Part shown: positions 26,726 to 64,000 of the stretch, one piece after another
Layout of the letters: each line of letters begins with the position of its first letter
Numbering within the stretch: position 1 is the first letter of the stretch
Assembly: GCA_024704765.1 (NCBI GenBank)
Contig: JAKMXF010000347.1
Coordinates: 133,270 to 197,269, forward strand
Length of the DNA stretch: 64,000 bases
Origin: Oopsacas minuta
Taxonomy: Eukaryota > Animalia > Porifera
Reading direction: 5' to 3'
Position numbers and translations under genes: made by a program
Notes under the pieces: model-generated
What the model saw: only the letters and a program-made list of their open reading frames with translations
Told to the model about the DNA's origin: nothing
Database searches by the model: none

Positions 26726-29700
26726 AATCTTAGCAAGAACCTTCATTAGATAATATTTTTCAAATTAGCTTGTCATCAGTCTAGTCAGGATTTGAGAAGG
26801 ATTTGTTTATCCACCATGTCTAATCATTGTCCTGATGTTGGGTGTATGTTCAGGACTGCCATACCAGCTGGGCTACCAGTAAGTGCCACAACATGCCCCT
26901 TTTGCCAAAAAAGTTTGGAATTAGTAGCAATTTTACCGATACCTGAAGATGATCTGGGAAAAGAAGATAACAAAGCACATGAAGATGATAAAGTGCAAGA
27001 ATATGTCAGAGCACAGGAAAATAATAGGGCACAAGAAGAGCCTGTGCTTGGAGAGAATAATCCTACTTCTGATCAACATGATTTCATTGCTTCTGAACCA
27101 ACACATAGGAAACTTAAACTCGTTATGTCTAATATCGAGTCAGATGCCTCTCTATCTCTACCATCTACACCATTCATTTCACCGGTACACACATTTGATC
27201 ATAATGCTGAGTATCATGGTGAACAGCCCAGAGGAGAGAATGTTTCTAATGTTAAAAAAAGGATCAAAAGTCTTTTTCGAAGAAAATCAGAATTACATTA
27301 TAATAACCGTACAAGGATGAAGCAACGACACGGACACAAGAGGCAATCTGTATTTGCGATTCATTTAGAATTACGAAGTCAAATGATAGGGAATAAGGAT
27401 ATACGTATTCAATTCAATACACTAATTCTCAGGGAATACTGTGAGCTGATAGATGAAATCAGTCTCCAGATTTACGATGACTGCCCAATTAAGAATTTTC
27501 AGACTACCTTTAAGAACTTTCAAGAATCAAATGTTGTGGAGATAAGTGGTTTTGAGTTCAATATTTTTCACGTTATCTTGAAATTTCCTCCAAAATATAT
27601 TTCTGATTTTCCGTACAAATATTGCTTGCAATTAAGATCAGGTGTTGATATCGATGAACATCTACAACATCCTTCAGACACCCAACTTTAACCGCTATTT
27701 TATCTGGGATGCTGCTGTAAGCCAAATTCATGATAATAAATATCAAAAATTTGATATGATGATACTACCGCAAATTCAGAGAGAGGGACCTATGGCCATA
27801 TCACGGAGTAATAAATTGTTTCAATTTACAAATGTCAAAAATAGACTAGTAGCATCATATCAAGCATTATTACCATCCAATTTTGGCTGTGGGTGCTCTC
27901 CAGAATGCCCCAACTTAGAGGATTACATAGAAAAATTCATGCATCGTGCAAAATCACTTTCTAATTTGTATCTACATGATCCGGATTTTGATGAATTGGA
28001 ACAATGGACAGATTCAAGTATCATAAAACTAGTTAAAGCTTGGATAATTAAATGTTATTCTCCTGAATATAATGCTACCTTAGATGACCAATCAATTATT
28101 GCTAAGTTCTATCTAGCATGTTGTCTGATAAATACTTACAGCATTCATAGTAATAGTTTGAATAAGCTAGTGATAGATATGATTGGGAATTCAATTCTAA
28201 CCATTTTTAGGAACGAAAGTTATACATTGAATGAAGCTATTTCTACAAATCCTGAGTTTAGAAACAAAATACAAACCGCACTCCATGAGTTTGTTTTAAT
28301 AGTGTGATGCTAAGCAAATATCCTAAAAAGCTATTACTACTAATTCCCATCTATCACATGATTACTAACCTCAAAGCTAGTGCTGTTTCATTACATGAAA
28401 AGTGTAGATACACAGAAAACGAATATTGGGGATTCCCTACTGATGTACAATTTTCTTGCCTAGAAAATATATCTTTTGATTCTGAAGAACTCCAATTAGC
28501 CCTTACCTTAGTCAAGTATGATGAACTTCTTTCGTATTCCATTGCTATATACACACTTAATGAAGGAAATGCGAAAAAATTTGTGAGCACTTTATCCACT
28601 CACAAGAATGTCCATTCCCATTGTCAGCTCTCATTAGTGTTTTATTATTCCGATTGAAGGTATCCAGGTCTAGTTCTAACCAAGACATCATTACTAAAAA
28701 ATATGATAAATTGACATCAGAAGTTATAAGGTCATTAAGTATTGCTTTCCAGGACGATTCTAAATTTCTTTTCGATGATATCTTTCGACTCATTCAGCTG
28801 ACTATCATTCTAGCAGTGCGGCTATCTACATACTTCGATCAAGAACAATTCGAGATCTGTTTAACATTAATTTCTGAAGCATATCAATACTGTTACCTTA
28901 AATCTCAACCTACAACTATCGTCCTCTCTGAAGAGATTTCAGAATTATTCACAGAATTTGTTATAAAGTGGTATAAGAATCAATTTAGAAAACGCGAAAA
29001 TCATATAAGGATGTTATAAAAGAAATTGAATTTTGGGAAAATATAATATCAAAATATTTCTCTCAGTCTACTGAATGGAAAGATAACTTCAGAAATTTCT
29101 TGAAAGATCGATTTACAGATACAAAAATAACAACAGAATACATAATCAAAGTCCTAACTCTTCAACCTAAACAAGACATATTGCAGGAACTTTTTATCCA
29201 TGAATTATATTCAAGATTAGCAAATTTAAAGTCTAAACAAGAAAAAGTGTCTATAGTCAAGCGTTTATATGAATATTTTTCTGAGATCAAACAACTAGGA
29301 AAATTGACTATAATATTTAGTCAGATATTACTTGATGAAAAGAAGACTTTTTGCCAAAACATTCACTGGCATTTTGTTACCTGGCCTTTATGGAGAATAT
29401 ATTTTTCCTTTCTCTCTTTAGAAAATATTGAACAAATTCTCTCTGAAGAAGCTATGGCTATGCTTGAAGATGCTAGTGTTCACTTTCTGTCTTTCTTAGA
29501 AACAATAAAACTTCAATCTATTAATGTAGGTAAGCTACAGCATATTGCTAAGAATAAAGGTTACTTCTCTGACATTATAACTCATTTCATACAGTTGAAG
29601 TGTTTATCCGGTAATGGATCTAAGGAAACTCTCGAAGAACTAGATGTATGTTTGAAAATGTTACATTGGTTCTTTGAGCAGATGCGCATGCTGAAAATAC

Positions 29701-32700
29701 TTTATACATTTACTGGAAAATTCGATGAGATTAATGATGAAAATATCGATGAATTTATAGGCAAGGAATTCGATGGTTACGAGATAGGAATGATCTGTTG
29801 TTCTACTGGAGAGAAGTTACAATTATCAATTGAATCAGATGCCGACATTAATAATATTGTGAATTTTACACATTTTGAATCATTATGCAAGATATGTGGG
29901 TCAATAGAAAAATCTTTCGTAATTACTGAAGTTTTTAAGGTTGTCATAAAGACTAAGTCCCTCCAAATGGATGAGTTTGATATATCAGTATTCTATGAGG
30001 CTCTTTGGTTACCTGCCTGGGATATTTGTGTTTTGCTTCTTAAAAATATTTCTAATGAATCCATACAAATATCAGTAATGTGTAAATATTTCGAAGTTAC
30101 TGCAAACGATGGAGAAATCGAAAACGAACTGATTTTACTCAATTTAGGATGTGAACAGTATCAAAAGATACAAAAAGCATTCAAAAAATCATTCAAGACT
30201 AGCGCACATAAGATTCACCTCTACTTCACACTTAAACTGCGTTCTCAAGCTGCAATTCTTATCTGTGATTTAAAAGAAAAGCTCTCAATTAAAACAAACT
30301 TTGAGAGCATAGAAAGGATGAAAAATGCTACTGATGTGTACTACGATAAGAAGATATCAGTAATGGATGATAAAGTAGGTGATGTTGCAAAGAATCTTGG
30401 GAAACTCTCTTCTTTTAATCTTGACGTAATTCAAGTCGTTATTGACAATATTGCTTTCATCAGATGGGTAAAGGAGAATATGATCGACTTAAATGAAGTG
30501 AAAGCTTTTGTCGATATATCCCTAACAGCCTGTGGAGGTAATCCAATGGAAACAGACAGAATTACGTGTTTCAGCTCTGTTTGTACAAACTTTTCTCCTC
30601 TCATATTCGGAATTGTTGAAAATACAAGTTACGAGACGCTCACTGCTAGATGCGAGCAAATCATTGAGAATGTTGGAAACAATAAAGAACTAACTAAGCT
30701 GCTCAAGCAAGTCGGAAAAAATGTAACATTTTGGGAAGAAATGAAACGATCTCATGGTGCAGTTGAAGAGACTACATTGATAGAGTTGGATAATTTGATG
30801 AAATCTGGAGTTTTTTATTTTGAAGGTTAGAGATTCATCCAATCTTTGTGATATAGTAAGGTTAAGAGTTGAGAGAGAAAACGAAAACGAAAAATTTTAC
30901 AGTCTAGAGCAGTTGAAAGAGTTTCGAAGTAAACTCATGCTAGTAGTAAGCAAAAATGAACAATCAGGAGGCCCAACAAACTCAGATAGTTATGAAAAAT
31001 CTCAACTATTTACACTCAAATTAGACAAAATAATTGAGATAGCAAAAATAATAACCCAGTTAGCGGAGAGTGATCATCAGGGATATCTGAAATATCTCAT
31101 TAACTTAACTGAAGCTGAAACAAGGTTAGAAGAAATCCACTCAAAACTGAATTCAATACTTCAAGTTTGGAGAAACATTATTGAAGAAGCACGAAATTCT
31201 CACTACTACTTGAACTACTATACTATATCTCAGATAGCTTTACTCCAAAAAGGTATCAAATCAGTTATTGAGGGTAGAAAAGATTCAGATCGAGAACAGC
31301 TATATCATCTACTCCGCTTGTTGAATAATGAAATTACTAAAAAAGATGTACAGCAGGCATTAAGAAAATCTGACATTATTTCTGAATATCTCAATCAATC
31401 AAGTTGTTCTGAATCCAACACCACACTAAGCACTAAGGAAATGCAGCTTGCTGAAGTAGTAAGAAGGGAAACTGGGATAACTATGGATGATATTAAGGCT
31501 GTTATTCTGGAACTGAAAGAATATCAAAGTAGTTATGTCATCTCACAGAAATCAATTATATATTGGTGTAAAAGACGGCTAGCACATGCAACAGAAAGTT
31601 GCGAGTGTAAAGAACTTCCAGATACAGGATCAGTATTTCTTCCAATCGAAATATCTCTTACAAAAGGAGTTCCAATTGAACCACATTTAGATATCAATAA
31701 ACTCGGAGATTTTCTAAAAGAAATACACAATTCATGCACATCCAAAATCACAGGAGAACGAACGTTGCCTTACGATTTGATCTATGGAACACCAAATCTA
31801 GTTGTGATGCCATCAAGTGAGATTTTAGAATTTCTCCTCTCTCTCTACCTGAGTGATAATGATAAATTTCCTTTACCATTTTACCATGAAGTATTGTTTT
31901 GTACTGATCAAACAACGAATGAAAATGTTGAAATCTTTTTTCGACGAGTATTGGATCAAGAAGAAAGCGTCTCTTATCTATTTTGCATGATTAATATAGA
32001 AAACTTGAAATACGAAGTTGCAGTTGAAACATTTTCAAATTTCAAGAACATATCACAGGAGTATGAAAATAGAGAGAACGAGAAACCTGGAAAATCTAGA
32101 TACAAACTTGTATTGATCTGTTCAGAAGAAAAGGAAGGATTCTCGTATTTGGCAACTGCCTTTGAAGACTACAAGAGGTCAATTCTTGTACACAATGAAC
32201 AAGAAGAATTAAAAAGACATTTAAACAAGAGAATTTCTCCAGTGTATCGACGCGCCATTTACAAGAACAGACAATCTGCTTGGGTTATTGACAAGGAAAA
32301 GTCTAAAGTTAGAATTGTAGCGTCAAATAGTTCGGGTGCAGGTAAATCTCTATATATTCAGAATCTCAGGTCAGACATGTTAAGTCAAGGAGTTGTTCGT
32401 GAGGATGAGATAGAACAAGCAGTTGTAACTGTAGCTATTCATGGGAATCAAGCATCAGAGGACTATCTAGTTGATCAGCTGCTGAGTAGAAATGTAAGCA
32501 TTGTGAAGCATGGAGTTATGTTCCATTTGGATATTGCATCTACGGTTCAGTTAGGTCTAGAATCTATACTCTTCAAGCTGCTTATATTAGGCGGAGTTTG
32601 TAATAGATCAGGAATGTTATGGCACAGTAGACATAAAGATTATTATGTAATAGAAATAACACTAAGCTCTGATCAAAATCAATTCTCCAAGTTCACCAGT

Positions 32701-35700
32701 CTTTTCCCAGTTGTACGCTGTATTCAACCCACTGACGCTCTGGAAGCAACGGCGGATATTAACACACATACAGTCCATTTGCTTACATTAAGAAATGACC
32801 AATATCAGAGAGTGGATGCATACTTGAAGACACTAGATATAGGTCAGAACTTAGATAGTTTTGTATTTAAAAAAACACGAAAATTTAAATTCGACCATAT
32901 TGAGAGATTAAATAGGACTCTAGAGAATTGTGGTATTGCTCAACCATCTTGGGCTGAAGTAAGAAATTTTACAAATTTTCTTGATAAACAGCTTTTGGAT
33001 TGTGACAAATCTGTTTATTGCAAATCTAAGATAATGGGACAGGAGTGGAATGGTTTCAAATCTTTTGTTGTAAAGTTCATGCTTAACATGTCTAAAGACT
33101 TTGCTACACCCGCTCTTGGGTCATGTTCCGAACTAGCCCGTAATAATTTGGCCAAGTTTGAGATTTTGGATGAGCGCAGGTGGGAGAATAACTCACATCC
33201 ATATATATTCTTTAATCCAGATGGACATACAATGACTTTCTTGGGGTTCAATATATCAAAGCAAGGGCATCTACTCGACTCAGATAATCCATCTAAAATA
33301 ATTAAAGAAAACATAATGGATCCTCAGCTTTACACAACATTGAATGCGAATAGAGTCTTACTTCAGGAAGATTATAACCTACTTAGCAAAGTCGAAAAGA
33401 TCGCGAAAATTGCTGGAGTTATGGGTATTGATTTTGGTCTTAATCCAATAGACCCAGATCCATGTTATGTCTTAACACCTGACAACATTAGAAAGATTCT
33501 GGCTATTCTGATGCGATTCCGTTGCAACATACCAGTAGTGATAATGGGAGAGACAGGCTGTGGAAAGACACGTCTCATCCAGTTCATGTGTTCATTGCAA
33601 GCTCTACAGACAGGAGCTACTAACATGTTAATATTGAAAGTACATGGTGGTACTACTGAGAAAGATGTAAAGACTAAAGTAGAAGAAGCTGAGGTGCTAG
33701 CTATGAAGAATTTCCGTGACCACGATATTGATACAGTATTGTTTTTTGATGAAGCTAACACTAGTCCAGCCATTGGTCTAATCAAAGAGATTATGTGTGA
33801 CAGGAGAATGTATGGTAGACATATCAGTAGCGACATTAGACTACAGTTCATTGCAGCTTGTAATCCTTATCGTAGACATACAAAGGAGATGTTGAACAAG
33901 CTGAGTACTGCTGGTCTTGGATTCTTCACCAAAGCAAGTGAGACCACGGATAGACTGGGAGATATTCCTCTCCGTGAGTTAGTGTACAGGGTAATTGAGC
34001 TTCCTGCTAGTATGCTTCCATTGGTATGGGATTTCGGTAAATTGAGCAACGATGTAGAGAAGGCTTACACGCGTGAGATAGTAGCAAAACACCTCCGAGA
34101 TCGCAACAGTCCAATACAAGCACGTGATAAGATAATAGTTGTCATAAGTAATGTACTTGCTGGTGCACAGAACTACATGAGAGAGAGGAAGGATGAGTGC
34201 AGCTTTGTGAGTTTAAGGGATGTAGAGAGAGCTATGCGAGTCATGTTATGGTTCTATAAAATACTCGATTATTTTCAACCACATAATACATCGTCACATC
34301 ACGAACAACTAAGCCTTGTGAATTTGGACGATGATGTTATTAATCTTAATGAGATGTTATTCATTCAGGGTCTTCTTAACGTAGGTGACTTCCTGCCGAA
34401 ATCTATAAGAGTTTCAAAAAGTGACACACACATAAAGTCAATCAATCAGATTGACTACATAACATACAGTCTTATTCTGTCGTTAGCTGTTTGCTACAGA
34501 GCCAAACTTCAAGAAAGAGATGATTTTGATATTAATATCGTTCGACGTTTCCAACATCCTCTCACGACAATTAGAGATCACAAGGTTATTCATAATGAAG
34601 TTGACAGATGTCAACAGCTGATTCTAGATGAGATGACCGTGGGAGCTAATATCGCTAAGAATAATGCTCTGAAAGAGAATGTATTTATGATGTTTGTGTG
34701 TATTGAACTTAAGATTCCTCTTTTCGTCATTGGTAAGCCAGGTAGCTCCAAATCTCTGGCAAAGTCTATCATTTCTAATTCAATGCAAGGTAGGCGGTGT
34801 CCAGATGGAAGTATTCTACAGAACTTTAAGCAAATCCAGATTATGTCATATCAGTGTAGTCAGCTGTCCACTGCAGATGGAATAATTGGAGTTTTTAATA
34901 ATTGTAGAAACTTACAAAACAAGACGGGATCTGATGCATTCACAGCTTGTGTAGTCCTAGAAGAAGTAGGCTTGGCAGAAGATTCACCTCTGCTTCCTCT
35001 TAAAGTATTACATCCTCTTCTAGAAGATAGCAATTATGGTTCTGAGGAGGTTGAGACGGGCATTGGTCAAACGAAGCGAAGTGGTAGAGACGATCCAGAT
35101 GATGAAATGAAGAATCGTGTGGCATTTATAGGAATTTCTAACTGGGCCCTTGATCCTGCCAAAATGAACAGAGGACTAATGTTGTCTCGAGGAGATCCAG
35201 ATCTTAACGAATTAATCATTAGTGCAAAAGGAATTTGCGAATCCGTAGGTGTTCATCCAGAAATTCATAAGAGCATTTCTGAAAAAATCCCATCTTTGGC
35301 TAAAGCATATCACTACCTTACTTCAAATCAAGTTAAACGACAAGATAAAGAAGAAAGGACAGATTATTTTGGGCTGAGAGATTTTTACAGTTTAATAAAG
35401 ATGCTTGTTTTCATTTGTAACGACAAAGATTCTAATCTGAATAGAGCGATCTTAGAGCATGCTGTTAAACGGAACTTTGGTGGAATATCAGGTGTAGATC
35501 CTGTTAGTGTATTTAATGAACTCGTGGAATTGCCAAAAGACAGTAAGAAAGTTCTAGATTCTTCTCCATTAGGGTTAATAACAGCGAACTTAACAAATCT
35601 TTCTCGCTCTTTCCACGGAGAGACTCGTTATCTCCTGTTATTCACTGAGAACTATGCTGCTCTCACTATTTTGCTGCGTTCACCAGAAATGTGGCCTAAA

Positions 35701-38700
35701 CATCAAGATGTCAATACACGTGTCATATTTGGATCTAGCTTTCCATGTGACCAGGAGTACTCTGCAGTTTGTCTTAACATCAATAGGATAAAGATGTACA
35801 TGGAATCTGGTAAAACTATCATTTTGTTGAATCTTGAGAATCTCTATGAATCTCTGTATGATGCTTTGAATCAGTACTACATGGTATTGAATAATCAAAG
35901 ATATGTAGATCTGGGGTTAGGTACCCATCGAATGAAGTGTCGTATTCACCAAGATTTCAAACTGATTGTAGTGGCCGACAAGGAAACTGTACAGGAAAGA
36001 TTTCCTACCCCTCTCATTAATCGTCTTGAGAAACATTTCCTAACAATGTCAACAGTATTGTCTAAAGACACGGACAATGTCAAAATTTCTGAGCAACTAA
36101 CTGAATGGGCAAAGAATTTTTCTACAATTGATAATGATCATTCTAGATTAGAGGAGAGAGATTGCTTTATTGGCTATCAAAGTGATACTCCATCGTGCAT
36201 TGTATTTCATGTCATAAAGGAGTACGAAAATGGCACGGCTTTGGATGGACAATATCATTGTAGATCAGTGTTGGAGAGAAGTCAGACTCTATTTCTAAAA
36301 ATGGCTACTACAGATGCTGTATTACGTGTGAAGAACAGTCTCCTCTCTGAAAAATCTGATGAACTAATAGACGAGTATTTTAAACTGGGGCTAGGCAGTC
36401 TTGAGGAGTATTTGCTAAAGGTGATGGATGATAAATGTAATAATACATTAGGGGCACATCTTACACTCACTACAACACACTCAAGAATTATGACAGACAA
36501 AGATGTGGATGAGTTGAATAGACGACTATATTCAAGTGCAAATACAAATACAATTGAGATAACAAACCTTTCTCTTCACCAATTCCAGACAGAGCAACAG
36601 TACTCTCGTGAGATTCAGAAGTTCTTGAGAGGAAGAGGGTTAGTGATGAAAGGGGACTGTTACAAAAAGATACTCCTGGTTCAGTGTGAAAGAGGAGCAG
36701 ATAATGCTAAGCTGATAACTTGTGCTCGTCTTAAGACTGTAGATGAGTTAAAGGACTGGATAGAAAGAGATGGAGAGTGTCAAGATGAAATATTTATTGT
36801 ATTCTTGATTCTACTGAAAAGAGAAACACATGGAAGTAAGTTTGCAAGTTTTTGTGGAGGTGATTGGAACACAGTTCATATTGATGACATCCATTCCCTG
36901 GATTATACTGAATTACCCCTCATCTCTCTTCTATATGGAAAACCAAATTGGCAGCTGTTTGATGAATATGATAAGGTAAACTTTGTGTTGTTGTAAATTT
37001 AATTGATTTGATTGCTCAAAAGCAAGGTAGAAAACAATTCGAACCGAATATCAGTATGCATGAAAAACTGCCTTACCGAACACTGAACACTGATACTGAA
37101 AATATTCGGTAAACTCAACTGAATGCTTCTGATAATAGTCGGTTTTGGTCAATTGATTCCGGATACTGCTATTCGGTTATTAACCGATTATCAACTACAG
37201 CAGATCTCGGATATAACGTACTCGGCTTAAGAAGTACTTTTTTCAATAATGGATCATTAATTTTGTACTAATTGTATAAGAAAAATATTTAGATAAGATG
37301 TACAGTACGCACTATTTTTTGTTTCCTGAGGGGTATACATTATATCCGATCTCTACTGTATTAATCAGATATTTCTCTGTTGAACTGAAAATTCAAACAT
37401 TCTGTTACAACCTTGCTACATTTCTTTACCAATCTTTAGATAACACCGCAACATATATCCCATAATAGAAGATTTAATGATTGTATTCAGCAAGCAGCTT
37501 CAAGATTAGACGATATTCATAGCAGTGGAATGCGTACTGTTGAAAGAATTCGAGATTTGAATATTCTCCTGACAAAAGACAAGTATCGTAGTAAGGAATT
37601 GTACTTAGTCGTTATGTAGCACTTCTAGTGTTTGGGGGGTAGAAATATACCCATCGCCTGGTTCAGACTCTCCCTGAATTACACAACAGAAATTTCTTAA
37701 AATGTTACGTCAATTTCCTGTTGCTGTATTTTAACCGATAACGGAAGGGAAAATATTTGCAATTTTTGAGGCAAAAACGGCGTATTTTTGCGGAAATTTG
37801 GGAAATGTTCTTACGATCGCAATATGTAGACCGTAATCGGTTAATTAATCGCGTCAAAATTAACATCATGACCACATGTATATTATTAACTTCTTTCAAA
37901 CTTGAGTTAAGGAGTGTTAGGAATGATTCTGTACAAGAGGAGGTAGTTTTATGCAATTATGTAATATGGAAGCAAGACAGGCATTCTAATTTCAGGAATT
38001 TTTCGATTAATACACTATGAAAACAAATTTCATGAATAATGTTTACCTTTTTCGAAATGCGTTTATTTATATATTCCTTTTCATAGTTGAGTTCATCAAG
38101 ACATTATGTCAAAGATTGACTAATCTGTTGAGAGATCAATCTAATTCTTCAATTGATACCAACACTAATTGGTTACAACAGACAGCTAATTGTGTAGAAG
38201 ACATACAATCATCTGGGACTTTCCGTAAAGCTGTAAATCTCCGTATTAACAGTGCTATTACTCCTCTAATAGCAGAGTTGATTGCTTGTATAGATAGAAA
38301 TGGAAATCTAGAGCTAGCTCTCTATAATGAAAAAGTACCAGAATGTTTATTCAATCTCTGGTATGATATATTCAGAGATGAGCGTCTGCTTATGTTACAA
38401 TACAAAGACACAATCTCTCCAAACACACTACTACCTAGAAGGAGAGTTCCTGTATTAAGTGATGGAGGTGGTGGAGAGTATTTCAAAGCTCAATTTCCTT
38501 TCTCTTGGTTGATTAATCAGCGTCTAGCTCAGCTTTCATCGGAAACAAAAATTTTATCAGGTGAAATACATCTTTTTACTGCTCGACACTTAGCATGTGA
38601 TTGATTTCTTCGGGTATTTCGGCCCAGTGTTAAAATGCGATTTACTGTACCAAACTATGCTATCGTATACAGTGGAATCTCGTAGTATAGTGGTATAGTG

Positions 38701-39031: not shown

Positions 39032-41828
39032 TCCTCCTAATGGCAAACCATAAATTCAATTCATGGTTAAGTTCAGATTGAGAAGCATGAAATTTCAATC
39101 TGTACCGACAGTAAGATCAATTGAAATTCTTCAAAGTTGCACTATTTAATTGGAGGCAATAGAAGAGTTAAATTTACCTGAAACACAGTTCTTCCAATTA
39201 ATTACGTCACTATAAATATGTTTCAATACATTTACTTACTATACAGTATTACCTATTAGTATAGTACGCTCAGCAAAGAAATTGATTGATGAGAACAAGA
39301 GGCAATTCGTTGCTTTCAGCTGCATACAATTATCCAGTTACTACTAGCCTTTCTAAAACTAGAGTATATTAGTGGAATAATTTGGAAATTTTGAGTGGAA
39401 ATTTGTGTAATACTTGACTGATTATAGAAAGAATAATTTCTCTTTAATTAACCTTTTATTAGTGTAGAGTCGAATTGAATTTCTCTATTTATAGTCGATC
39501 ATTCTGATGACTTTTGCAGACGTCTTGAAGTTGTTTTCGTGAAAACTCCCCTTGGGGAGAAAATAATGAAGTATATAATGGAAAAGGATGAGAGTCTTCA
39601 GCTAGTACAATTGTATTTACATGATTTCATATATATGAATCTATTTCCAATTGACAATAACAAATATCAGGTAAGTTTATTTCAGTTATCCCACCTCATG
39701 AGATCATATGTATACAAGTCGGGCTGAATATATACATCCAGTGTTCCCTCTAAGGATTCGAGTGGTATCCAGGAATTTTCTCATTTTCGAGGTTAGCCTC
39801 CGGGAATTTTCCTGAAAAATGCTCGAATCTCTAGCAAGATTTTGAATACATATCAAGAGTTGTATGTAATAAAGATTTTGAAAATAGTAATGTATATTCT
39901 CCATACCTGATAACCTAGCCATTGAAACAAAATCTCTAGCGTCATATGAAATATTATTAATTTGATGATTAATCTATGTATTTTGCTGTAACTTTCAGGC
40001 TCTGAAAATCCTAAACCGCTAAGCAACCAATTACCCCTAACAATATGTTAAAACCTTATCTCTAATGCTTTCGAATTTAAATTGAAGAGTATGAAAATAT
40101 GATTAAATCATCAGGCGTGAAATCAGAGAGAAATATTCAAATTCATATCCTAGGTACAAATCTCCGACCCAAATCTCTGTGTGTACCAACTTTGTGTTAA
40201 CCGGACTGCCAAACTTCGAACGGCCTCGCGGATGTACGGACGTCGCACATCGTCCATGCCATTTGGGCATCTCTCTATAGGAGCTGTACTAAAATGATTA
40301 ATTGTGTTTGTGAGTATTACGCATAGCACAGAAAATCATTTAGATTTCTGTATTTTGAATAGGTCTATAAAACCGTCCTTCAGAACTATATCAATACCTC
40401 ATTACCCGATGAAGATGAAGAGCAGAGAGATATAATGACTATTCCAAGAATTCATTGTGCTTTTGAGAACTCAAAGCAGTTATTAGAATTATTTCAACAA
40501 GCATTTCAATTGGATAATGGTTTAGCTGGACAATTTAATAAGATTATCTCAAAGTTGGAGAAAGTTGATGATGAAAAAATGAATTGTTTAGAACTAGTCT
40601 TGATAGAAGTAATAATTAATCTGTGTGGCCACAAGAAAGAACGTACAGCTAGCAAGAAGCTAGCTGAGCAGTATGTGAGTGAGGTTAATCAATGGCAAGC
40701 TATAGTGGAGAAGGGATTGAGTTTTAACCAAAATTCATCTGATGAAAATGAAAAATTCAAACTAGAATTGAGGTACAATTTATTTTGGCTCGGACAAGTT
40801 CGAGTCTTGGAGGAAATTCGCTTTTTTGGCATTTTGGTTTTGAGAAGTTGGCATCCCTGTCAAAACCCGGAATTCAAGGGACATGTAATTGCCATACTTG
40901 TAGAAATACATATCCTTATTGCATACGGACTGAACATTTGTAGGAAAATATGACAATAATTTCGCATTATAGGCAATGATTTCGCATATTTCCATATATT
41001 ATTTATATGTAATTATTTATATCTTTAGATGCAGGTGGACTCGTATTATTGCAGTTCAATTATTTATTGGTAATTGCGCCCTTGGTGTTTGGTACAGTGA
41101 AATTGAATCTAAGATACACAAACTATTTACGGTAAGTTGATTATGAAATAGTAAAACTTACTATTTCTTTTTAATACAGTCAATATCGAACACAGATATA
41201 TTGAAATACCAGCTTATATTTGAGTCTGAAATTATACTAAAATGGTCTCCATTGTATTTCTTAGAGATTTAATTGAGGAGCCCTACCAAAATTGAGATAT
41301 TCCTGATGAAAAAGAGGGCCTAATAAACCACTGATTTCTCAAACCGTCAAAGAAATATTATAGTACCGGGTATACCGAAATAATTATCGCGGACACATTA
41401 ACTTCGTTATAACGGAGTTATTTGTTATCTAACAATATTAACATTTGATCTATCCAATTGGCAAGAATGATAGCTAGTAAATTTTATTACTATCTTATCA
41501 GGTTTATGAATTCATGTTACTGTTTCACTATCTAGCTCCTTGGAGAAACTCCAGATTTCACTTCTGTAGAACTAATCAAAGAAGTCATTCAAATACTAAC
41601 AAACTGTATGAAGAAAATGAAAAAAGGTTCAGGGTAAGGGATGACCCGATGTTCCTAATAATATTGAATGGATGATCAATAATTAACTTTCTCCTAAATA
41701 TATATTTATCATCTGTGTTCCCTCCAATTTACTTGTAACAAGGCATCTGATGGGGAATATAGGCAATAATCCGGGGCGTATTTATAGACAGTTAGACACA
41801 CTTACTCTCAAATTTTGTGGGGTATCAG

Positions 41829-42249
41829 TAGGGCATTAGTCGATCGTGTTAAACAAGATTACGATCCCGATCCCGTTCAAGATCCTTATTTCAAAAACGA
41901 TCGCGATCCCGATCATTTTTCTGATCGTTTGTGAATATTCAAGATGTGTATTATTGATTGTTCCATAATTTCTTATGCCAAAAGAAACATAGGTGGAAAA
42001 TCAACACATTCTACGAACGAATATTACTGATCATTGGACACAAATTTGGAACAGTTACCTAAGTATACAAAACGCTAATGATAGTAGCATTCAAAGTATA
42101 CAAAAATGATCCAAATTTTTGTGCAAAAAAGGATCGCGATCTTACATCCGATCTTTCATAATACAATGATCGCCGATCGTCGCCAGATCGTCAAAGAAGT
42201 ATCGCGATCGTGATGGAGCGATCAATGATCGTACGATCCTAATGCCCTA
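41829..42249. mobile_element. hAT-type MITE (421 bp) with perfect 8-bp TSD and GATC-rich subterminal repeats, in RNF213 copy 1 intron 7
   Basis: TIRs TAGGGCATTAG(TC)GATCGT / ACGATCCTAATGCCCTA; GGTATCAG at 41821-41828 and 42250-42257; many GATCGCGATC/GATCCCGATC units near both ends. Confidence 0.9.
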
Positions 42250-44835
42250 GGTATCAGGTATGCGCTCTGAATTCCTAAATGAGGCACTCAAAGTGTTACA
42301 AATCCCGGTGTGGGTGTTTGGTTTAATAAAGACAAAATTCTAGGGGAATACCTCCAGATTGAAGTAATAAAATCGACTTTGCGCATACACCGAATTTATA
42401 ACCACTATTACATTAGAAGTACCTGAGAAAACATAAACCTTGAAGTGAGGATAACATTATTATTTGATGAAGAATATAAAGTACTGTAGACCTCGAATAG
42501 CGTGTTAAATACACTGAACAATATCCAAGGTATATTCACTTGACAACTACTAAAATAGTGTTAAAATACACTGGAACAACATGGAAGCACAATTGCTGTT
42601 CTGTCTGTACACAAATGTTGCAGAATCTTTTACACAGTACCACCACGTTATGTACTATTTAATATATGCCCAATGGACATGCACACTGTAATATATGCAT
42701 TCTCAGATTCTTGTAATATAATTAAGACGCATGCACATTGTAGATTTTAAAATATGTACGGATTCTATAAGGGAAATACTGTATATCATAACTCGCATAT
42801 ATCTAGATTAACTGCACTTGACATACAAGAATTCCAGATTAAAGCTACAAGATTCTTCATTAGTATCCTAACCAATCTAACATTCAAATCTATACGATTA
42901 GAAGATAGAAATAATGAACTGAACAATCTGATAATGGGGTTTGTGAAATCCAATGAGAAGAATGTAGGCAAAATGTTCTCTGACAAAGGACAAATTATTA
43001 TATTTACAAAAGATGGAGTTGATCCTTCTCCAACTTTCAGAGCCTATTTACTACAGATGCTGATTAGATATAGGTAACCTTCTTTATTATTTTAGAAGAA
43101 ACTTCCCCAAAAGGTTATCATGTCATATCGTAATTTTATCTCATTTTTCTAGGCAAGATGTCTTTAAAGATTATATTTCTGACTATTTGACAAATGTTGT
43201 GAATAATTTGAAGAATAATCTGATGAAGAGCGAATTATATCTACTGATATCTCAATCAATTGAGGTAATATTAATGTAAATATTTGGCCATATATTGTAC
43301 ATGCGAGAGCACTGCAGCGCCAGACAAATTTCAGGACATAAACTGGAAAGTTTTGGTAATTTACTGAATTAATTATTTAGGATTCTCTCCATCAACTAAT
43401 TAAAAGTGGAAAACCTGATCAAGAAACTGAGTTTGTCAAATTCCACATTAACAATGTAACTCGAGATCAACCAGATATATCATATCAATTGCTGGAAAAG
43501 ATAGCTAGACTGAGGTTTATCAGTGTGTACATATCTAAATGGGTTGTTGAATGCTATAACCTTCTTAAAACACAATCAAACACACAACTACCTGATCATA
43601 TACTAGGAGAGAGAATGAGATTGATTACCAGCTTTCAGGAAATCTGTTTAATGAAAGGACACGAAGATATCCATTCACTTCTCTTCAAGAGTATATACCA
43701 TAAGCTGGGAAGTGATACACTTAATCGTCTTAAATCAAATATCTCCTGTTCCTGGATTATACCAGAATGTGTTTCAGACAATATTGAGGTACCAGTTACA
43801 AATACTAATGCCAAATATATTCTGAAATAATTATAATTATTATTACTCTAAGATCTCTCTCAAATTGAAGTTTATAAATACCATATTTCTCTGAATAAGC
43901 GCCCTGTACTTATTCATATGTAGACTAATCACTTGTTTCTATATACACTCAGTGTCCATAATCTTACTAATACTTGACTTTAATAGTTATTTCTTATTTG
44001 CCATGTAAAATTATGCTTAATTACTTGTGTGAGAATACTCCGGTGCGAATTCAGAAATACATTAATTTATTTGAATCAAATACTTGTAGATTCCTGATTA
44101 TTTTCTAATATACAAAGCAGAATATACAATAATGAAAATTGCAATTGAACAAATAATTAGGATACAGACTAAAGAACCTCTCTTGCGGTTATTCAATCCT
44201 GGAAATGTGAGTATTGTACTTCTTAGTGAGTTTAATTTCCTTATGAAAATCTTTCAATCAACTAAATACTCCGCTGTAGAAACCTGAACCAGCAGAGTAC
44301 TTCATATACTGCCTTTTTCAACTAATCGTATCTTCTATACAACAAAATGGAGAACCTCAGATATTTACAATTGAGGTTTGTAATATTATTTCTTAAACAT
44401 AAATTTAACTCAAATATTTATTGCTTGATTTTATGGATATTATGATTATGTAATCCTAAATAATGATAATCAAAAAGTATTTGATGTGTTTTTAGAAATT
44501 TGATAGTCTGAAAGACTTTGTGAATTCTGACCTGAAGAAAATCAATCCAGTACTATACAATTTAGCTATTCAGATAGCAACAAACAACTTTGGAAATGGA
44601 AATCTACCAAATCTTAAACTTACAGATACTTCCAGTAATCATGAATTATTCCTAATCAGACTAATATACCATGTAGCTGTTATGTTATCTTGTAAGAAAT
44701 ATCACAAGCTGTTCCTACCTATTGCTTTGATATACGAGGACCCTCAGACTCTACAGGATAAGTTATTTCCTACTATGATGGATGATCCACTAATATCTGC
44801 TAAAGTTGCTATGATTGGAGAATCTGGAAAATGGT

Positions 44836-45349
44836 ACCAATGTCCTAAAGGTCATCCTTACTTCATTGGAAATGTAAGTGCTAATGACATCCAATCATAT
44901 AGGTGTACAGTATACTGTAAATTTTTACAGGACCATCACGTGAATTAGCCTCCAATCCATCATCTGAGTCAGGTGCAGCACAACCTGTGCAGTCTGACGT
45001 ACGCCGGACCTCTATATCCTCTCAGACTGGTAATTTTCCTGTCTTTGAATGAAAAGAAATAGAGCCTTTGGGTATTATATCATATTCAGGTATATAAATA
45101 TGGTCCAATGTCCTACACATGACTAGGTATAATATCGGAAATCCGCCGCTGGACCACATATTGAAACGATGCGTCGCCACCGCAAGTACACCTACATGAT
45201 TTCGGCGTCCCTCTTAGGTTAAATACGCTGTCCAAGGCTAATTACATTCCTATCATAAATTTGTTTTGATTATCTATTTGTAGTGTGGCGGTGCAGTAAC
45301 CACTTACGTTTGTGCTGATTGTGGGTGTAAAATAGGAGGAACAGATTAC
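44836..45349 (+). other. RZ finger of RNF213 copy 1, split by a phase-0 intron (44874-45283)
   Basis: Spliced peptide WYQCPKGHPYFIGN|CGGAVTTYVCADCGCKIGGTDY matches human CPNGHPCSVGECGRPMEQSICIDCHAPIGGIDH residue-for-residue in spacing. Confidence 0.9.
44931..45029 (+). other. Exon-like 99-nt segment (AG...GT flanked) inside the RZ-finger intron
   Basis: Acceptor AAATTTTTACAG (44930) and donor CTG|GTAATT (45030); GC-richer than its flanks; open as a phase-1/1 exon (PSRELASNPSSESGAAQPVQSDVRRTSISSQT) but gives DHHVN* in the host phase 0. Confidence 0.45.
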
Positions 45350-53194: not shown

Positions 53195-56100
53195 ATGTCT
53201 AATATGTCTAATTATTGTCCTGATAAAGGGTGTTCGTTCAAGACTGCCATACCAGCTGGCCTGCCAGTAAATGCCACCATATGTCCATTTTGCCAAAAAA
53301 GTTTGGAACTAGCACCAATTTCACCTGTACAAGAAGATAATCTGGTAATTGACCCTCAACAAGGAGTAGAAATATTTGAAGGTGCAAAAAGTGAGGACAT
53401 TTCTAAATCTATCTCTGAAAGTGAGGAAAGTTTTGTAATTAATGAGCAACCACATTTACATGTACCTACTTCTACAACGCCGTCTGAAACACAATTGCTA
53501 AAAGATAACCTCTTACAGAATGATAACTCATCTCTCATATCAAAACCCGCATTAAGCGGTGAAGGCAGCCTTCCTGAAAAGTATAGTGAAAACAATTCTC
53601 CAATTCCTTCATCCGGTAATCAAGGAAAGCCTTCAGACATAGAAAATACATTTATTATTGAGTCACAAAGAGATAACAAGGCACAAGAGCGTAACCTGGC
53701 CCTAGAAGAGAACAAAGCTACTCCTGCTAAAAATGATTCTAGGGGTTCTGAATCTTCAGATGAAAATCCAATACCGCTATCATCGGATCAACAAAAGAAT
53801 CTGGTACTGGAATATAGAAATACACAAGAGAATCACCTGGCCCTTGATTCTGATGACGAGAATCAGATAGATCAACTTGCTAAACAGGCCAAAGGAGAAT
53901 CTGTTAAAAGCAAGTTCAAAAATTTTATTCTAAGAAAACCTGTGCCCTTATTTACCAACCGCAAAAAAAAGAAGGGACGAAGCAGACAGAAGAGGCATCC
54001 GGTAAATCAGATTCATTTTGGATTACGAAGTTTAATGGAGGGAAAAACGGATATACGTATTCAATTCAATACACTAATTCTTAGGGAATACTATGAGCAG
54101 ATAGGTGAAATCAGTCTTGAGATTATCGATAAGAACTTTGTCAATTTTCCATCTTATTTTAACAGCTATGACCAACCAAAAGAAGTGGAAATAAATGGTT
54201 ATGAGTTCAATATTTTTCACGGTGTCCTGATGTTTCCTACCAAATGTATATCCGATTTTCCATACAAATATTGCTTACATTTTAAATCAGGTCATGAGAT
54301 CTATGAACACTTACACCATGATTCAGACATCAACTTCAACCGGTATTTTAAATGGGATGATGATGCTGTAAACCAAATTTGTGATAATAAATATCAAAAA
54401 TTTGATATGATGATACTCCCGGAAATTAGGAAACAGGGAAACTCGATACTTTTTGGGCCTGATAATATAGTAGCTAGTAGTGATAGAGAGATTCAATTTT
54501 CCAATATCGATGATAGACTATTATCATCATTTCAAGCATTGCTACAATCCTATTTTCTCTCCGACTACTTTAAACATCGCACCAACTTAGAAAATCTTTT
54601 AGAACAATTTATATATTGTGTGAAATCACTCTCGAATTTCTATCTACATGATCCAGATGTTAATGATTTGCAACGATGGGATGAGTCAAATCTAACAACT
54701 AAACTAGTTAAAGCTTGGATAATGGAATATTATTCTTCTAAAACAAATGCTACCTTAGATGACCAATCAATTATTGCTAAGTTCTATCTAGCATGTTGCC
54801 TGATAAATACTTACAGCATTCATAGTAATAGTTTGAATAAGCTAGTGATAGATATGATTGGGAATTCAATTCTAACCATTTTTAGGAACGAAAGTTATAC
54901 ATTGAATGAAGCTATTTCTACAAATCCTGAGTTTAGAAACAAAATACAAACTGCACTCCATGAGTTTGTCTTTAAAAGTGTGATGTTAGGCAAATATCCT
55001 GAAAAGCTATTACTAGTAATTCCCATCTATCACATGATTACTAACCTCAAAGCTAATGCTGTTTCATTACATGAAAAGTGTAGATACATGGAAAACGAAT
55101 ATTGGGGATTCCCTGTTGATGTACAATTATATTCCCTAGAATATATTTCTTTTCATTCTGAAGAACTCCAATTAGCCTTTACCTTAGTGAAGTACGATAA
55201 ATTTCTTCCATATACTATTGCTATATACACACTCAATGAAGGGAATGCAATAGATATGTGTGAATACTTTATCCAATCACACGAATGTCCATTATCAGCC
55301 CTTATGAGTGCTTTATTGTTTCGATTGATGGTATCCAGGTCTAGACCCAATCCAGATATCAGTGTTAAAAAAGATGACAAATTGATAACAGAAGTTCTTA
55401 AATCATTAAGTATGGCTTTCAAGGGCGAACCTGAATTTCTTGTAGATGATATTTATCGACTCAACAATCTGACTATCAATCTTGCACTGAAACTTTCAAC
55501 AGACTTCAATCGAAAACAATTCGAACTATGTTTAACACTAATTTCTGAAGCATATGAATATTGTTACACTGAATCAGGAGCTAACGCTACTATTTCCTCT
55601 GAAAATATTTCAGAATTATTCAATGAGTTTGTTATAAAGTGGTATGAGTTTCATATTAGAAAACAGGAAATGTCATATGAAGATTTACTATTTGAATTGG
55701 ATTTTTGGGAAAATTTATTATCAGTATATTCCTTCTCTCAATCTATTGAATGGAAAATTAATTTAAGAAATTTCCTGAAGAAACGATTTACAGACACAAA
55801 TATATTGTTAGAATACTTAATCAAAATCCTAACTCTTCAACCTACAGATAACTTAATGCAAGAAATACTCATCAACGAACTTTTTTCAAGAATAGTAGAT
55901 TTATACTCTAAAGATAGAATACCAATAGTGAAGCGTTTATTTCACTATTTTTCGGAGAATAATCAACTGCAAAAATTAAACATAATATTTAGTCAAATAT
56001 TACTTGATGAAGAGAAGACTTTTTACCAAAATATTAACTGGCATTTTGTTAGCTGGGACTTATGGGATATATATTTTTCCTTTCTCTCTTTAGTAAATAT

Positions 56101-59100
56101 TGATCAAATTCTCTCTAAAGATGCAAAAATTATGCTGGAAAATGCTCGAGGACAATTTTCATTATTCCTAGATGCAATTACTGGCCATTCTATAACTGTT
56201 GGAAATCTAAAACAAATTGATAAGAATAAAGATAGCTTCTCAGTGCTTATATCTATTTTCATACAGTCAGTAGCATTATCTAAAAATTTGGACAAACTAA
56301 CTCACATGGAACTAGATGTATGTTTGGAAATGCTAAAATGGTTCTTAGAGCAGATGGACATGCTTAGAACACTTTATAGATTTACTGAAAAATTCGATGA
56401 GATTAATGATGAAAATATCTCAAAATTTTTACCTTTGACTTTCGATGGTCACGAAATAAGAATGCTCTGTTCTAGCGGAGAGAAATTACAATTATCTATT
56501 ATATCACATCCCGATATAACAAAAATCGTAAACTTTGAACATTTCAAATCATTATGCACGATAAGTGAATCAATACAAGAATCCTCCGTAATTACTGAAG
56601 TTTTTAAGGATGTCAGCAATGGAAGGGGTATACAAATGGATGAGTTTGATATATCAGATTTCTATAATCACGTTTGGTTACCTGCTTGGGATATTTGTAT
56701 TCTTCTTGTTAAAAATATTTCCAATGAATCCATACTATTATCAGAATTGTCCAAATATTTCAAAGTCACTGAAAAATATGAAGAAATAGAAAACGAACTA
56801 ATCTTACTGGATTCTGAGTGTGAACATTATCAAAATACTCCAAATCAAGTGAAAAAATCTTTCAAATCTAGCGCTAATAAAATTCATATCTATTTCACTC
56901 TTCTACGGCGTTCTCAAGTTGCAACTCTTATCTGTGAGCTAAAAGAAAAGTTCTCAATTAAAACCAACTTTGAGAGCATAGAAAAATTAAAAAACGCTAG
57001 CGATATGTATTATAATAAAAAACTATCAGTAATGGATGCTAAAGTAGGTGAATTAGCAAATGATCTTGGAATACTCTCTTACAATCTCGAAGTAATACAG
57101 GCTGTTATTGAGAATATTGCTTTCATAAGATGGGTAAAGGAGAATATGATTGACTTAAATGAAGTGAAAGCTTTTGTCGATATATCTCTAACAGCCTGTG
57201 AAGGTAATCCAGTGGAAACAGACAGAATTACATGTTTCAGTTCTGTTTGTAGTAACTTTTCTCCTTTCATATTTGGAATTAACGAAAATACAAGTTATGA
57301 AACTCTCATCACAAGATGTAAACAAGTAATTGAGACTGTTGGAAAGAATGAAAAATTAACTGTGCTGCTCGGGCAGGTCGGAAAAAATGTAACATTTTGG
57401 GATGAAATGAAACGATCTCATGGTGCAATAGAAGAGACTACATTGGTAGAGCTGGATAACTTGATGAAATCTGGAGTTTTCATTTTGAAGGTTGGAGATT
57501 CATCCAATCTTTGTGATATAGTGAGTCTAAGAGTTGAGAGAGAAAACGAAAATGAAAAATTTTACAGTCTAGAACAGTTGAAAGAGTTTCGAAGTAAACT
57601 TATGCTAGTAGTAAGCAAGAATGAACAATCAGGGAATAGACCTGGCCCAAATAGTTATGAGAAATCTCAACTATTTACACTAAAATTTGACAAAATAATA
57701 GAGATAGCAAAAATAGTTATCCAATTAACAGAGAGTGATCATCAGGGATATCTGAAATACCTCATTAACTTAACTGAAGCTGAAACAAGGTTAGAAGAAA
57801 TCCACTCAAAACTCAGTTCAATACTTCAGGTTTGGAGGAATTCAATTGAAGAAGCTCGTAATGCACATTATTACTTGAACTACTATACTATATCTCAGAT
57901 AGCATTACTCCAAAAAGGTATCAAATCATTTATTGATGGGGGAAAAGATTCAGATCGAGAACAGCTATATCATCTACTCAGCCTGTTGAATTTTGAAGTT
58001 ACTAAAAATGAGCTACAACAGGCATTTAGAAAATGTGACTACACCTCTGAATATCTCAATCAGCAGCCATGTCTTGCTGAATCCAGCAGCAACTTCAGTA
58101 AAACGGAAATCCAACTTGCAAAGTCGGTAAAAACGGATGCTGGTGTCGAATTGAACATTATAAAGGATGCCATGTTGGATATGAAGAGATATCAAAGTAG
58201 CAATATTCTCTCGAAAAAATCGATTCTATATTGGTATGAAAAACATAAAACACAACCCAATTCATCATGTAGACCATTTCCAGATACAGAATCAAAATTT
58301 CTCCAAATCAAAATATCCTGCACAAATGCGACTCAAATGAAAACAAGTGTGGATTTTAATAAATTGGGAAGTTTTCTAACAGAAATATTCAGATCACGTA
58401 CTTCCAAAATCTTAGCAAAAAGAAATTTACCCTCCGATTTGAAATATGGAACACCAAATCTAGTTGTCATACCATCAAGTGAGATTTTAGAATTTGTCCT
58501 CTCTCTCTACCTGTGTGATAATGATAAATTTCCTTTGCCATTTTGCCATGAAGTGTTGTTTTGTACTGATCAAACAACCAATGAAGAGGTAGAGATCTTT
58601 TTCCGACGAGCATTGACAGAACATGAAGCAAGCGTCTCGTATATATTTTGCATGGTTAATATAGAAAACTTGAAATACGATGTTGCGGTTGAAAGTTATA
58701 CAGAATTCGAAAGTTTAGGAAACAACAGACCCCGAGATTGTTCATACAAACTTGTATTGATATGTTCAGAAGAAAATGAAGGATTCTCTTATTTAGCAGC
58801 TGCGTTTGAAGGCTACAAGAGATCAGTTCTTGTACTCAATGAAACAAAAGAATTTACAGATACTTTAAACAGGAGAATTTCTAGTGCCTACAAAAACAGA
58901 CGGTCTTATTGGCTTGTTGACAAGGAGAAGTCTAGAGTCAGAATTGTGGCATCAAATAGTTCGGGTGCAGGTAAATCTCTATATATTCGGAATCTCAGGT
59001 CTGACATGTTAAGTCAGGGAGTAGTCCGTGTGGATGAGATAGAACAAGCAGCTGTCACTGTTGCTATTCACGGGAAGCAAGCTTCGGAGGAACATCTAGC

Positions 59101-63505: not shown

Positions 63506-63790
63506 GTTTGTAATGTTATTATCTAAAATTTAGAACACGTAAATCATATGTCATCCAAACGGACGTCTCGTCTCCAGATGTTTCACCCCTCGGATGTTTC
63601 GTCCCCAACGAAATTGTATATATGATTTATACAGTAGATGGCGGATATATAAACACAGGTTATAAGAACAAGCCGGTTATAAGCACCTTAATTGATTTAC
63701 GGAATCATTTGTATTCTCCTCCATGGAATTTTTACTGGTTATAAGAACACTCTTAGAATAGTAGTGAAATTGGTTCTTATTACCGGTGTA

Positions 63791-63946: not shown

Positions 63947-64000
63947 TGTAAATATTTCCAATGAGATTATAGTGATTAATAGTTCTTTTAAATCATCTGC

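What the first reader, a model, noticed from the sequence alone, without database searches (positions are those of the whole stretch)
41536..43073. RING-less RNF213: the RING domain is missing exactly at intron 7
Seen: exon 7 ends ...ILTNCMKKMKKGS-G and joins (phase 2/2) to LTALDIQEFQIKATRFFISIL. In human RNF213 the equivalent flanks (..SKTLSRFGIQP / ..EKHARFRQMCNSFFVDL) enclose the C3HC4 RING. I found no compatible RING exon in the 1.17-kb intron. Established: RNF213 LPS ubiquitylation is RING-independent and uses the RZ finger. Inference: this is a natural RZ-only E3, which bears on whether the RING was gained late or lost repeatedly.
Basis: partly seen in the sequence, partly recalled or inferred. 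Interest (0 to 1): 0.75.

Follow-up and report, generated by a model that had tools for sequence, protein, structure and literature searches.

The report
Sponge RNF213 missing its RING exon
This glass-sponge copy of the giant immune ubiquitin ligase RNF213 has cleanly lost the one small exon that encodes its RING finger but keeps its second catalytic zinc finger (RZ), a loss that recurs in other animals, so it is real but only moderately new.

Summary
The window is from Oopsacas minuta, contig C347. Exon 7 (41536-41633) joins exon 8 (42807-43073) across a phase-2 GT-AG intron, as in NCBI's own model P0002. In alignments with 62 RING-bearing RNF213 proteins, the RING block is missing exactly at this junction. 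No RING is detectable in the intron or anywhere else in the 64-kb window.

The same genome has one RING-bearing paralogue, on C66. There the RING is a single 192-nt, phase-2/2 exon, and its flanking introns sit at exactly the positions of copy 1's exon-7 end and exon-8 start. A hemichordate gene has the same layout (183 nt). So the RING is an old, frame-neutral cassette exon, and this gene lost it.

The loss is shared by at least 6 Oopsacas paralogues, most with a 60-73 bp intron 7. Copy 1's 1173-bp intron is a later expansion that includes a ~430-bp dispersed repeat; it is not a decayed RING.

Trees show the RING is ancestral and was lost independently in glass sponges, Amphimedon and stony corals.

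The RZ finger is intact. Activity and transcription were not tested. Copy 1 has five frameshifts upstream.

Earlier follow-ups in this scan reached the same reading on paralogues elsewhere in this genome.

The parts
26807..30815 (+). N-terminal arm of RNF213 copy 1, broken by five frame changes relative to copy 2's single ORF
   Evidence: tblastn of copy 2's ORF (P0001) gives abutting HSPs in frames 2,3,2,1,3,1. The NCBI model P0002 starts only at 30937.
30820..36996 (+). Large exon/ORF (2058 aa) of copy 1 encoding the dynein-like AAA core
   Evidence: Uninterrupted ORF. It is 46-48% identical to RNF213 of corals, amphioxus and molluscs, and the homologues carry PF07728/PF12775.
41536..41633 (+). 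Exon 7, the last exon before the position where the RING should be; it ends in phase 2 (GG|GTAAGG)
   Evidence: It aligns without gaps to the exon that precedes the RING exon in the C66 paralogue.
41634..42806 (+). Intron 7 (1173 bp, GT-AG, phase 2). It stands where RING-bearing genes have intron + RING exon + intron
   Evidence: No RING in any frame. The homologous intron is 60-73 bp in four paralogues and 388 bp in one.
41827..42254 (.). Copy of a ~430-bp dispersed repeat (MITE-like) inserted in intron 7
   Evidence: At least 40 copies at 74-92% identity across the genome.
42807..43073 (+). Exon 8, the first exon after the missing RING (G-LTALDIQEFQIKATRFF...)
   Evidence: Seven homologous exons in the genome. 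Its start aligns without gaps to the exon after the RING exon in C66 and in Glandiceps.
44832..44873 (+). RZ finger, first half (WYQCPKGHPYFIGN), followed by the donor GTAAGT
   Evidence: PF20173 at 29.4 bits, cut-off 27. Coordinates.
45284..45349 (+). RZ finger, second half (CGGAVTTYVCADCGCKIGGTDY)
   Evidence: All conserved Cys/His columns are kept in the alignment with 25 homologues. Coordinates.
53195..63526 (+). Copy 2 of the RNF213-like gene (3443-aa ORF). Its 3' part lies beyond the contig end
   Evidence: The end of contig C144 is the likely continuation and is RING-less with a 73-bp intron 7.

Best explanation
Copy 1 is one of at least 6 glass-sponge RNF213 paralogues descended from an ancestor that lost the RING by precise loss of a single exon. 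In RING-bearing RNF213 genes the RING is one small exon of 183-192 nt, phase 2 at both ends and divisible by three. Removing it, by deletion or by permanent skipping and later deletion, joins exon 7 to exon 8 in frame and leaves one intron where there were two. The loss happened after duplication from a RING-bearing gene of the C66 type and before the family expanded. Copy 1's intron was later inflated from about 70 bp to 1173 bp by a dispersed repeat and other DNA. The protein keeps the AAA core, the E3 scaffold on both sides of the gap and an RZ finger with all zinc ligands. If it is made, it most likely transfers ubiquitin through the RZ finger, as RING-deleted mammalian RNF213 does in the laboratory. 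Shown here: the gene structure, the absence of a RING, the homology of the intron positions and the independence of the losses. Inferred: the deletion mechanism, the enzymatic activity, and the expression of this particular copy.
For: The junction matches the NCBI model. The RING block is missing exactly at the junction. No RING is found in the intron or the window. In C66 the RING exon is L006:6421-6612, 192 nt, phase 2/2, a C3HC4 RING by Pfam, and its flanking exon ends align without gaps to 41633 and 42807. The layout is the same in a second hexactinellid assembly (L014, 192 nt) and in the hemichordate Glandiceps (L015:45705-45887, 183 nt). Intron 7 is 60-73 bp in four paralogues, and copy 1's intron holds a repeat with at least 40 copies. 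In the AAA-core tree the hexactinellid clade (100) splits into a C66-type group that includes the RING-bearing C66 and the RING-less family (99). The coral RING-less clade (100) lies inside the cnidarians. The AU test rejects a single RING-less clade at p 2e-70. The RZ finger is intact. dN/dS is 0.44 over 933 E3-module codons against the C144 copy, with no stops. RING deletion is tolerated in mammalian RNF213 (PMC11549300, PMC7311170).
Against: No transcript spanning 41633/42807 was examined; the third word search found only genomic ORFs, and the look-up of encoding contigs closed. Copy 1 has five frame changes in its N-terminal arm, so this copy may be truncated or dying. A dN/dS of 0.44 is only moderate constraint, and a pairwise value cannot assign it to one copy. 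The coral and Amphimedon RING-less states rest on annotated protein models, not on DNA inspected here. The C303 paralogue is also RING-less but groups with C66 on a long branch, so there may have been one or two losses within this genome.
Confidence: 0.85

Rival explanations
1. Annotation or reading artefact: a RING exon exists in the 1.17-kb intron, or nearby, and is included in real transcripts.
For: The intron is unusually long for this genome, whose average intron is 341 bp (PMC10280926). No transcript data were inspected here.
Against: No stop-free piece in any of the six frames resembles a RING: the RNF213-RING HMM gives best E 1.1 in the intron and 0.58 in the window, there is no C3HC4 pattern, and Pfam is empty. 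Four paralogues have only 60-73 bp at this place, too short for a 183-192-nt exon plus two introns. About 430 bp of the intron is a dispersed repeat.
Confidence: 0.03
2. The RING exon decayed in place, so copy 1's long intron is the degraded remnant of intron + RING exon + intron. This is the reading of the scan's other first reader.
For: The length of 1173 bp would be enough to hold a former exon and two introns. In C66 the equivalent span (L006:6347-6741, intron + RING exon + intron) is about 395 bp.
Against: The closest paralogue (C144, 76% identical in exon 8) has a 73-bp intron, and three others have 60-70 bp. The short intron therefore predates copy 1 and the extra DNA is secondary. Part of it is a mobile repeat, and no residual RING similarity remains.
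Confidence: 0.05
3. Copy 1 is a pseudogene or non-expressed debris. The RING-less architecture is real for the family, but this copy makes no working ligase.
For: There are five frame changes in the N-terminal arm relative to copy 2. The NCBI model starts after the last of them. dN/dS of 0.44 is relaxed.
Against: A 2058-aa ORF and all downstream E3 exons are open with canonical splice sites. The RZ finger is intact. The frame changes could be assembly errors, and a shorter protein starting downstream remains possible.
Confidence: 0.3
4. RING-less is the ancestral state of RNF213 and the RING was gained later in some lineages.
For: Several early-branching animals (a glass sponge, Amphimedon, corals) carry RING-less forms.
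Against: RING-bearing genes occur in the same glass sponge (C66), in Oscarella, in cnidarians and in bilaterians, at the same position and with the same exon boundaries. The RING-less forms nest inside lineage-specific clades next to RING-bearing ones. A single RING-less clade is rejected.
Confidence: 0.02

Closest known systems
Vertebrate RNF213 / mysterin (mouse cryo-EM structure, PMC7311170)
   Same: It has the same giant architecture: N-arm, six-unit dynein-like AAA core, E3 module, RZ finger and C-terminal domain. The AAA core is 46-48% identical to animal RNF213 proteins, and both flanks of the RING are alignable.
   Different: The ~60-residue E3-RING, which sits at the edge of the mouse molecule (residues 3940-3999), is absent. 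The E3 module is far more diverged than the AAA core, at about 25% identity to any non-hexactinellid protein.
Engineered RING-deleted RNF213 (Otten 2021 and Ahel 2020, as cited in PMC11549300 and PMC7311170)
   Same: It is the same domain deletion with the RZ finger retained. In the laboratory such proteins still auto-ubiquitylate and ubiquitylate pathogens.
   Different: This one is natural, fixed in a gene family and produced by loss of one exon. Its activity is untested.
Oopsacas minuta RING-bearing paralogue on contig C66 (L006/L008/L009)
   Same: It is in the same genome and the same hexactinellid clade, with the same intron positions around the RING site and an RZ finger present.
   Different: It keeps the 192-nt RING exon (PF13920). 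It is only 48% identical in the AAA core and 28% in exon 8.
RING-less RNF213-like proteins already in public databases: stony corals (Acropora, Montipora, Stylophora, Oculina) and Amphimedon queenslandica
   Same: The flanks abut at the same boundaries, 3-10 residues apart. Each coral genus sampled also has a RING-bearing relative.
   Different: These are independent losses on the tree. They were seen only as annotated protein models, because the DNA could not be fetched.
ZNFX1 (the other known RZ-finger protein)
   Same: It carries an RZ finger and no RING (background knowledge; bioRxiv 10.1101/2025.10.14.682297 was listed but not read).
   Different: It has a helicase core, not a dynein-like AAA core, and it is not homologous outside the RZ finger.

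Membership tests
RNF213 / mysterin | Dynein-like core of AAA units in one polypeptide | tested here: met
   The 2058-aa ORF is 46-48% identical to annotated RNF213 of corals, amphioxus and molluscs. PF07728 and PF12775 are recorded on P0002.
RNF213 / mysterin | E3 module scaffold on both sides of the RING position | tested here: met
   Both flank HMMs match P0002 (2380-2481 and 2489-2610). Alignment.
RNF213 / mysterin | RZ-type zinc finger about 460 residues after the RING position | tested here: met
   PF20173 at 29.4 bits against a cut-off of 27. All conserved Cys/His columns are kept.
RNF213 / mysterin | C3HC4 RING finger inside the E3 module (the feature that names the family) | tested here: not met
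   No RING in P0002, in the intron or in the whole window. The positive control in C66 is detected.
RNF213 / mysterin | Ubiquitin ligase and ATPase activity | not testable with these tools
   This needs the expressed protein and biochemical assays.
RING-type E3 ligases | Cross-brace C3HC4/C3H2C3 zinc-binding domain that binds an E2 | tested here: not met
   As above, none is present in copy 1.
RZ-finger E3 ligases (RNF213/ZNFX1 type) | RZ finger with its zinc ligands and the Cys of the IGxCG motif | tested here: met
   The sequence WYQCPKGHPYFIGN|CGGAVTTYVCADCGCKIGG aligns column for column with RING-bearing RNF213 proteins.
RZ-finger E3 ligases (RNF213/ZNFX1 type) | RZ-dependent ubiquitin transfer | not testable with these tools
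   Known only for mammalian proteins (PMC11549300).

The most novel reading that the evidence does not exclude
The RING of RNF213 is an ancient, frame-neutral cassette exon that animals have discarded repeatedly. They keep one RING-bearing gene and expand families of RZ-only ligases. In the glass sponge these RING-less paralogues would be working RZ-dependent immune ligases whose fast-evolving E3 modules diversify target recognition. That would be a natural dissection of which RNF213 functions need the RING.
Probability: 0.35. Interest if true: 0.65.

Novelty: new variant of a known kind. Interest (0 to 1): 0.5.

Why it matters
No bona fide substrate of the RNF213 RING is known, and laboratory RING deletions leave pathogen ubiquitylation intact (PMC11549300). 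Independent natural losses of exactly this domain, each beside a retained RING-bearing paralogue where that could be checked (Oopsacas, corals), show two things. The RING is dispensable for some conserved role of the machine. It is still kept for another role. This gives comparative material for finding what the RING does. It also shows how gene structure, here a symmetric exon conserved from sponge to hemichordate, makes a domain easy to lose. The RING-less proteins are already in public databases under ordinary names, and two full-text searches found no paper describing them.

Tried and rejected
1. Hidden RING exon. This was rejected by six-frame stop-to-stop pieces, a C3HC4 pattern, an RNF213-specific RING HMM and Pfam.

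2. RING decayed in place. This was rejected because paralogues have 60-73-bp introns and copy 1's intron carries a dispersed repeat.

3. Downstream part of copy 2. It cannot be read on this contig, because the window ends at the contig end. The end of contig C144 fits as its continuation (orientation, nearest-paralogue identity, matching counts of 8 AAA cores and 8 exon-8 homologues), but there is no sequence overlap, so this stays an inference.

4. Transcript evidence. A word search with exon 8 alone returned only genomic ORFs from another hexactinellid-like assembly.

6. A RING-less family member in the other assembly (L013) showed no exon 8 or RZ finger within 10 kb downstream. This is unexplained.

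Exons were searched by reference one at a time, and NCBI's model P0002, returned by the tool, served as the spliced comparison.

8. No human sequence was used.

9. The large representative search, structure prediction and fold search were not run; the question did not need them.
Full report
**Source and layout.** The window is AT-rich eukaryotic DNA. It is G000:C347:133270-197269, the last 64 kb of a 197-kb contig in a 61-Mb, 365-contig assembly. That matches the published Oopsacas minuta genome (PMC10280926), and the best protein hits are NCBI proteins of that glass sponge. Two RNF213-like genes lie in tandem on the + strand:
- Copy 1 runs from about 26.8 kb to 48.1 kb. The NCBI model P0002 (3630 aa) covers it from 30937.
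- Copy 2 starts at 53195 as a 3443-aa ORF and runs off the contig end.

**Check of the observation.**
- Exon 7 (41536-41633) reads LLGETPDFTSVELIKEVIQILTNCMKKMKKGS plus two bases GG before GTAAGG.
- Exon 8 (42807-43073) follows tatctag. Its first base completes Gly, then it reads LTALDIQEFQIKATRFFISIL....
- The intron is 1173 bp and phase 2. P0002 uses exactly this junction.
- I aligned the 870 residues that end just past the RZ motif from 26 full-length homologues. The RING-bearing proteins (corals, Nematostella, Oscarella, amphioxus, Glandiceps, Lineus, bivalves) have a ~70-column C3HC4 block that falls precisely into the gap between ...KKMKKGS and GLTALD....
- With HMMs built from the two flanks and from the RING block, the flanks of P0002 lie 8 residues apart with no RING hit. 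In all but one of the 62 RING-bearing proteins they lie 64-77 residues apart (135 in the exception), with RING hits of 1e-9 to 1e-26.
- The RING normally sits about 507 residues before the RZ motif. The junction in P0002 is at the expected distance.

**Is a RING exon hidden?** No.
- No stop-free piece of the intron in any frame has a RING pattern.
- The RNF213-RING HMM gives best E 1.1 in the intron and 0.58 anywhere in the 64-kb window, and no C3HC4 pattern exists in any frame.
- Pfam finds nothing on the nine most Cys/His-rich intron ORFs. The control exon from the C66 paralogue passes PF13920 at 28.1 bits against a cut-off of 27.

**The in-genome comparison.** The genome holds seven clear homologues of exon 8, plus a weak eighth on C303, and eight AAA cores plus fragments. 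I fetched the DNA upstream of each exon-8 homologue. Only one paralogue, on C66, has a RING (E 8e-8). Its structure is:
- the exon-7 homologue ends ...GATATTAG|gtaagt, in phase 2;
- a 192-nt exon (L006:6421-6612) encodes CLKC-x11-CFHFRCRTC-x10-CPEC and ends ...TGTAG|gtaggt, in phase 2;
- the exon-8 homologue starts after ctgtag.

The end of the upstream exon and the start of the downstream exon align without gaps to copy 1's 41633 and 42807. So where C66 has intron + RING exon + intron, copy 1 has one intron. The C66 orthologue in a second hexactinellid-like assembly (ENA ERZ25072730, L014) has the same 192-nt, phase-2/2 RING exon. The RNF213 gene of the hemichordate Glandiceps talaboti (L015) has a 183-nt, phase-2/2 RING exon at the same two positions. 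The RING is therefore an old, symmetric cassette exon whose removal keeps the reading frame.

**Origin of the long intron.** Intron 7 lengths in the paralogues:

| Paralogue | Intron 7 |
|---|---|
| C144 (closest, 76% identical in exon 8) | 73 bp |
| P0003 gene on C347 | 67 bp |
| P0027 gene on C299 | about 67-70 bp |
| C177, one copy | 60 bp |
| C177, other copy | 388 bp |
| Copy 1 (this window) | 1173 bp |

None of these has a RING. The short intron is thus the older state, and copy 1's 1173 bp is a later expansion. Window 41827-42254 is one copy of a ~430-bp dispersed repeat with at least 40 copies at 74-92% identity. The rest of the intron is unique and shows no RING similarity. This argues against the reading that the RING decayed into this intron.

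**When and how often the RING was lost.** I built an IQ-TREE (LG+G4, quick search) of the AAA core from 57 proteins.
- The hexactinellid clade has support 100. It splits into a C66-type group, which includes the RING-bearing C66, and the RING-less family (support 99), which includes copies 1 and 2.
- Eight coral RING-less proteins from Acropora, Montipora and Stylophora form their own clade (100) inside the cnidarians, next to RING-bearing cnidarian proteins.
- Oculina P0081 and Amphimedon P0114 are separate.
- Holding all RING-less rows together costs 1111 log-likelihood units, with AU p 2e-70.

The RING is therefore ancestral for these animals and was lost at least three times, each time at the same boundaries (flanks 3-10 residues apart).

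Two caveats apply. The coral and Amphimedon states come from annotated models only. The divergent C303 paralogue is also RING-less, with about 190 bp between its exon-7-like and exon-8-like parts, but it sits with C66 on a long branch. Whether Oopsacas had one loss or two is open.

**What copy 1 retains.**
- The RZ finger is split over two exons (44832-44873 and 45284-45349). It passes Pfam PF20173 and keeps every conserved Cys/His column.
- The Tyr in IGGTDY, at a column where many homologues have His, also occurs in many RING-bearing homologues.
- Against the C144 copy, 933 E3-module codons give dN 0.126, dS 0.287 and a ratio of 0.44, with no stops. This is moderate constraint.
- Against function: the N-terminal arm shows five frame changes relative to copy 2's single ORF. 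The 2058-aa AAA exon and all later exons are open.

**Copy 2.** Its 3' part is not on this contig. The end of contig C144 carries, in the matching orientation, the exons that follow the large AAA exon. It is the closest relative of copy 1 in those exons and has no AAA core of its own. The counts of AAA cores and exon-8 homologues match at eight each if the two are joined. If this is right, copy 2 is RING-less with a 73-bp intron 7. There is no sequence overlap, so this remains an inference.

**Mechanism.** Published work shows that RNF213 ubiquitylates pathogens and itself through the RZ finger. Deleting the RING has no effect, and no bona fide RING substrate is known (PMC11549300). The RING is a ~60-residue unit at the edge of the mouse structure (PMC7311170). 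By analogy, the sponge RING-less proteins would act as RZ-dependent ligases. This step is inferred, not shown.

**Novelty.** Two full-text searches found no paper on natural RING-less RNF213 or on RNF213 in Oopsacas. The proteins themselves are already public. After my analysis I saw that earlier follow-ups in this scan had reached the same reading on paralogues elsewhere in this genome.

**Limits.**
- No transcript evidence was obtained.
Exons were searched one by one by reference, and P0002 was used as returned.
- No human sequence was used.

Noticed in passing
window 41827-42254: This is a copy of a ~430-bp dispersed repeat with at least 40 copies (74-92% identity) on many contigs. It is rich in GATCG motifs and looks like a non-autonomous element.
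   Followed up: partly
window 26807-30815: Copy 1's N-terminal arm has five abutting frame changes relative to copy 2's single ORF, while the next 6.2 kb are open. This is either early pseudogenisation, a shortened gene or assembly errors.
   Followed up: partly
window 46106-47534 versus L016 (G000:C144:782500-791300, minus strand): The last exons of copy 1 are 93-97% identical to the C144 copy (dS 0.05-0.1), whereas the exons just upstream have dS 0.18-2.5 (most 0.3-1.2). This suggests recent gene conversion of the C-terminal domain between paralogues.
   Followed up: no
window 63527-64000 and L001 (G000:C144:790700-796183): Copy 2 runs off the end of contig C347. The end of contig C144 carries the matching downstream exons in the right orientation, so the two contig ends probably join.
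   Followed up: partly
L007/L010 (G000:C303:225000-244600): This is a very divergent RNF213 paralogue (43% identity in the AAA core, ORF in several pieces). It also lacks the RING, and no RZ motif was found within 9.9 kb downstream of its AAA core. It may be degenerating.
   Followed up: partly
L013, L014 (ENA ERZ25072730): A second hexactinellid-like assembly holds 50 or more AAA-core paralogues of the RING-less family (59-74% identical to copy 2), a much larger expansion than in Oopsacas. One member showed no exon 8 or RZ finger within 10 kb downstream.
   Followed up: partly
window 45335-45349 (IGGTDY): The Tyr at an RZ-finger column where many homologues have His is not special to this gene. 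Several RING-bearing coral, Oscarella, Lineus and Mercenaria proteins have it too.
   Followed up: partly
L014 21973-24838: In the C66-type gene of the second assembly, the intron after the RING exon is about 2.9 kb and contains three called ORFs (132-152 aa). This may be an inserted element.
   Followed up: no
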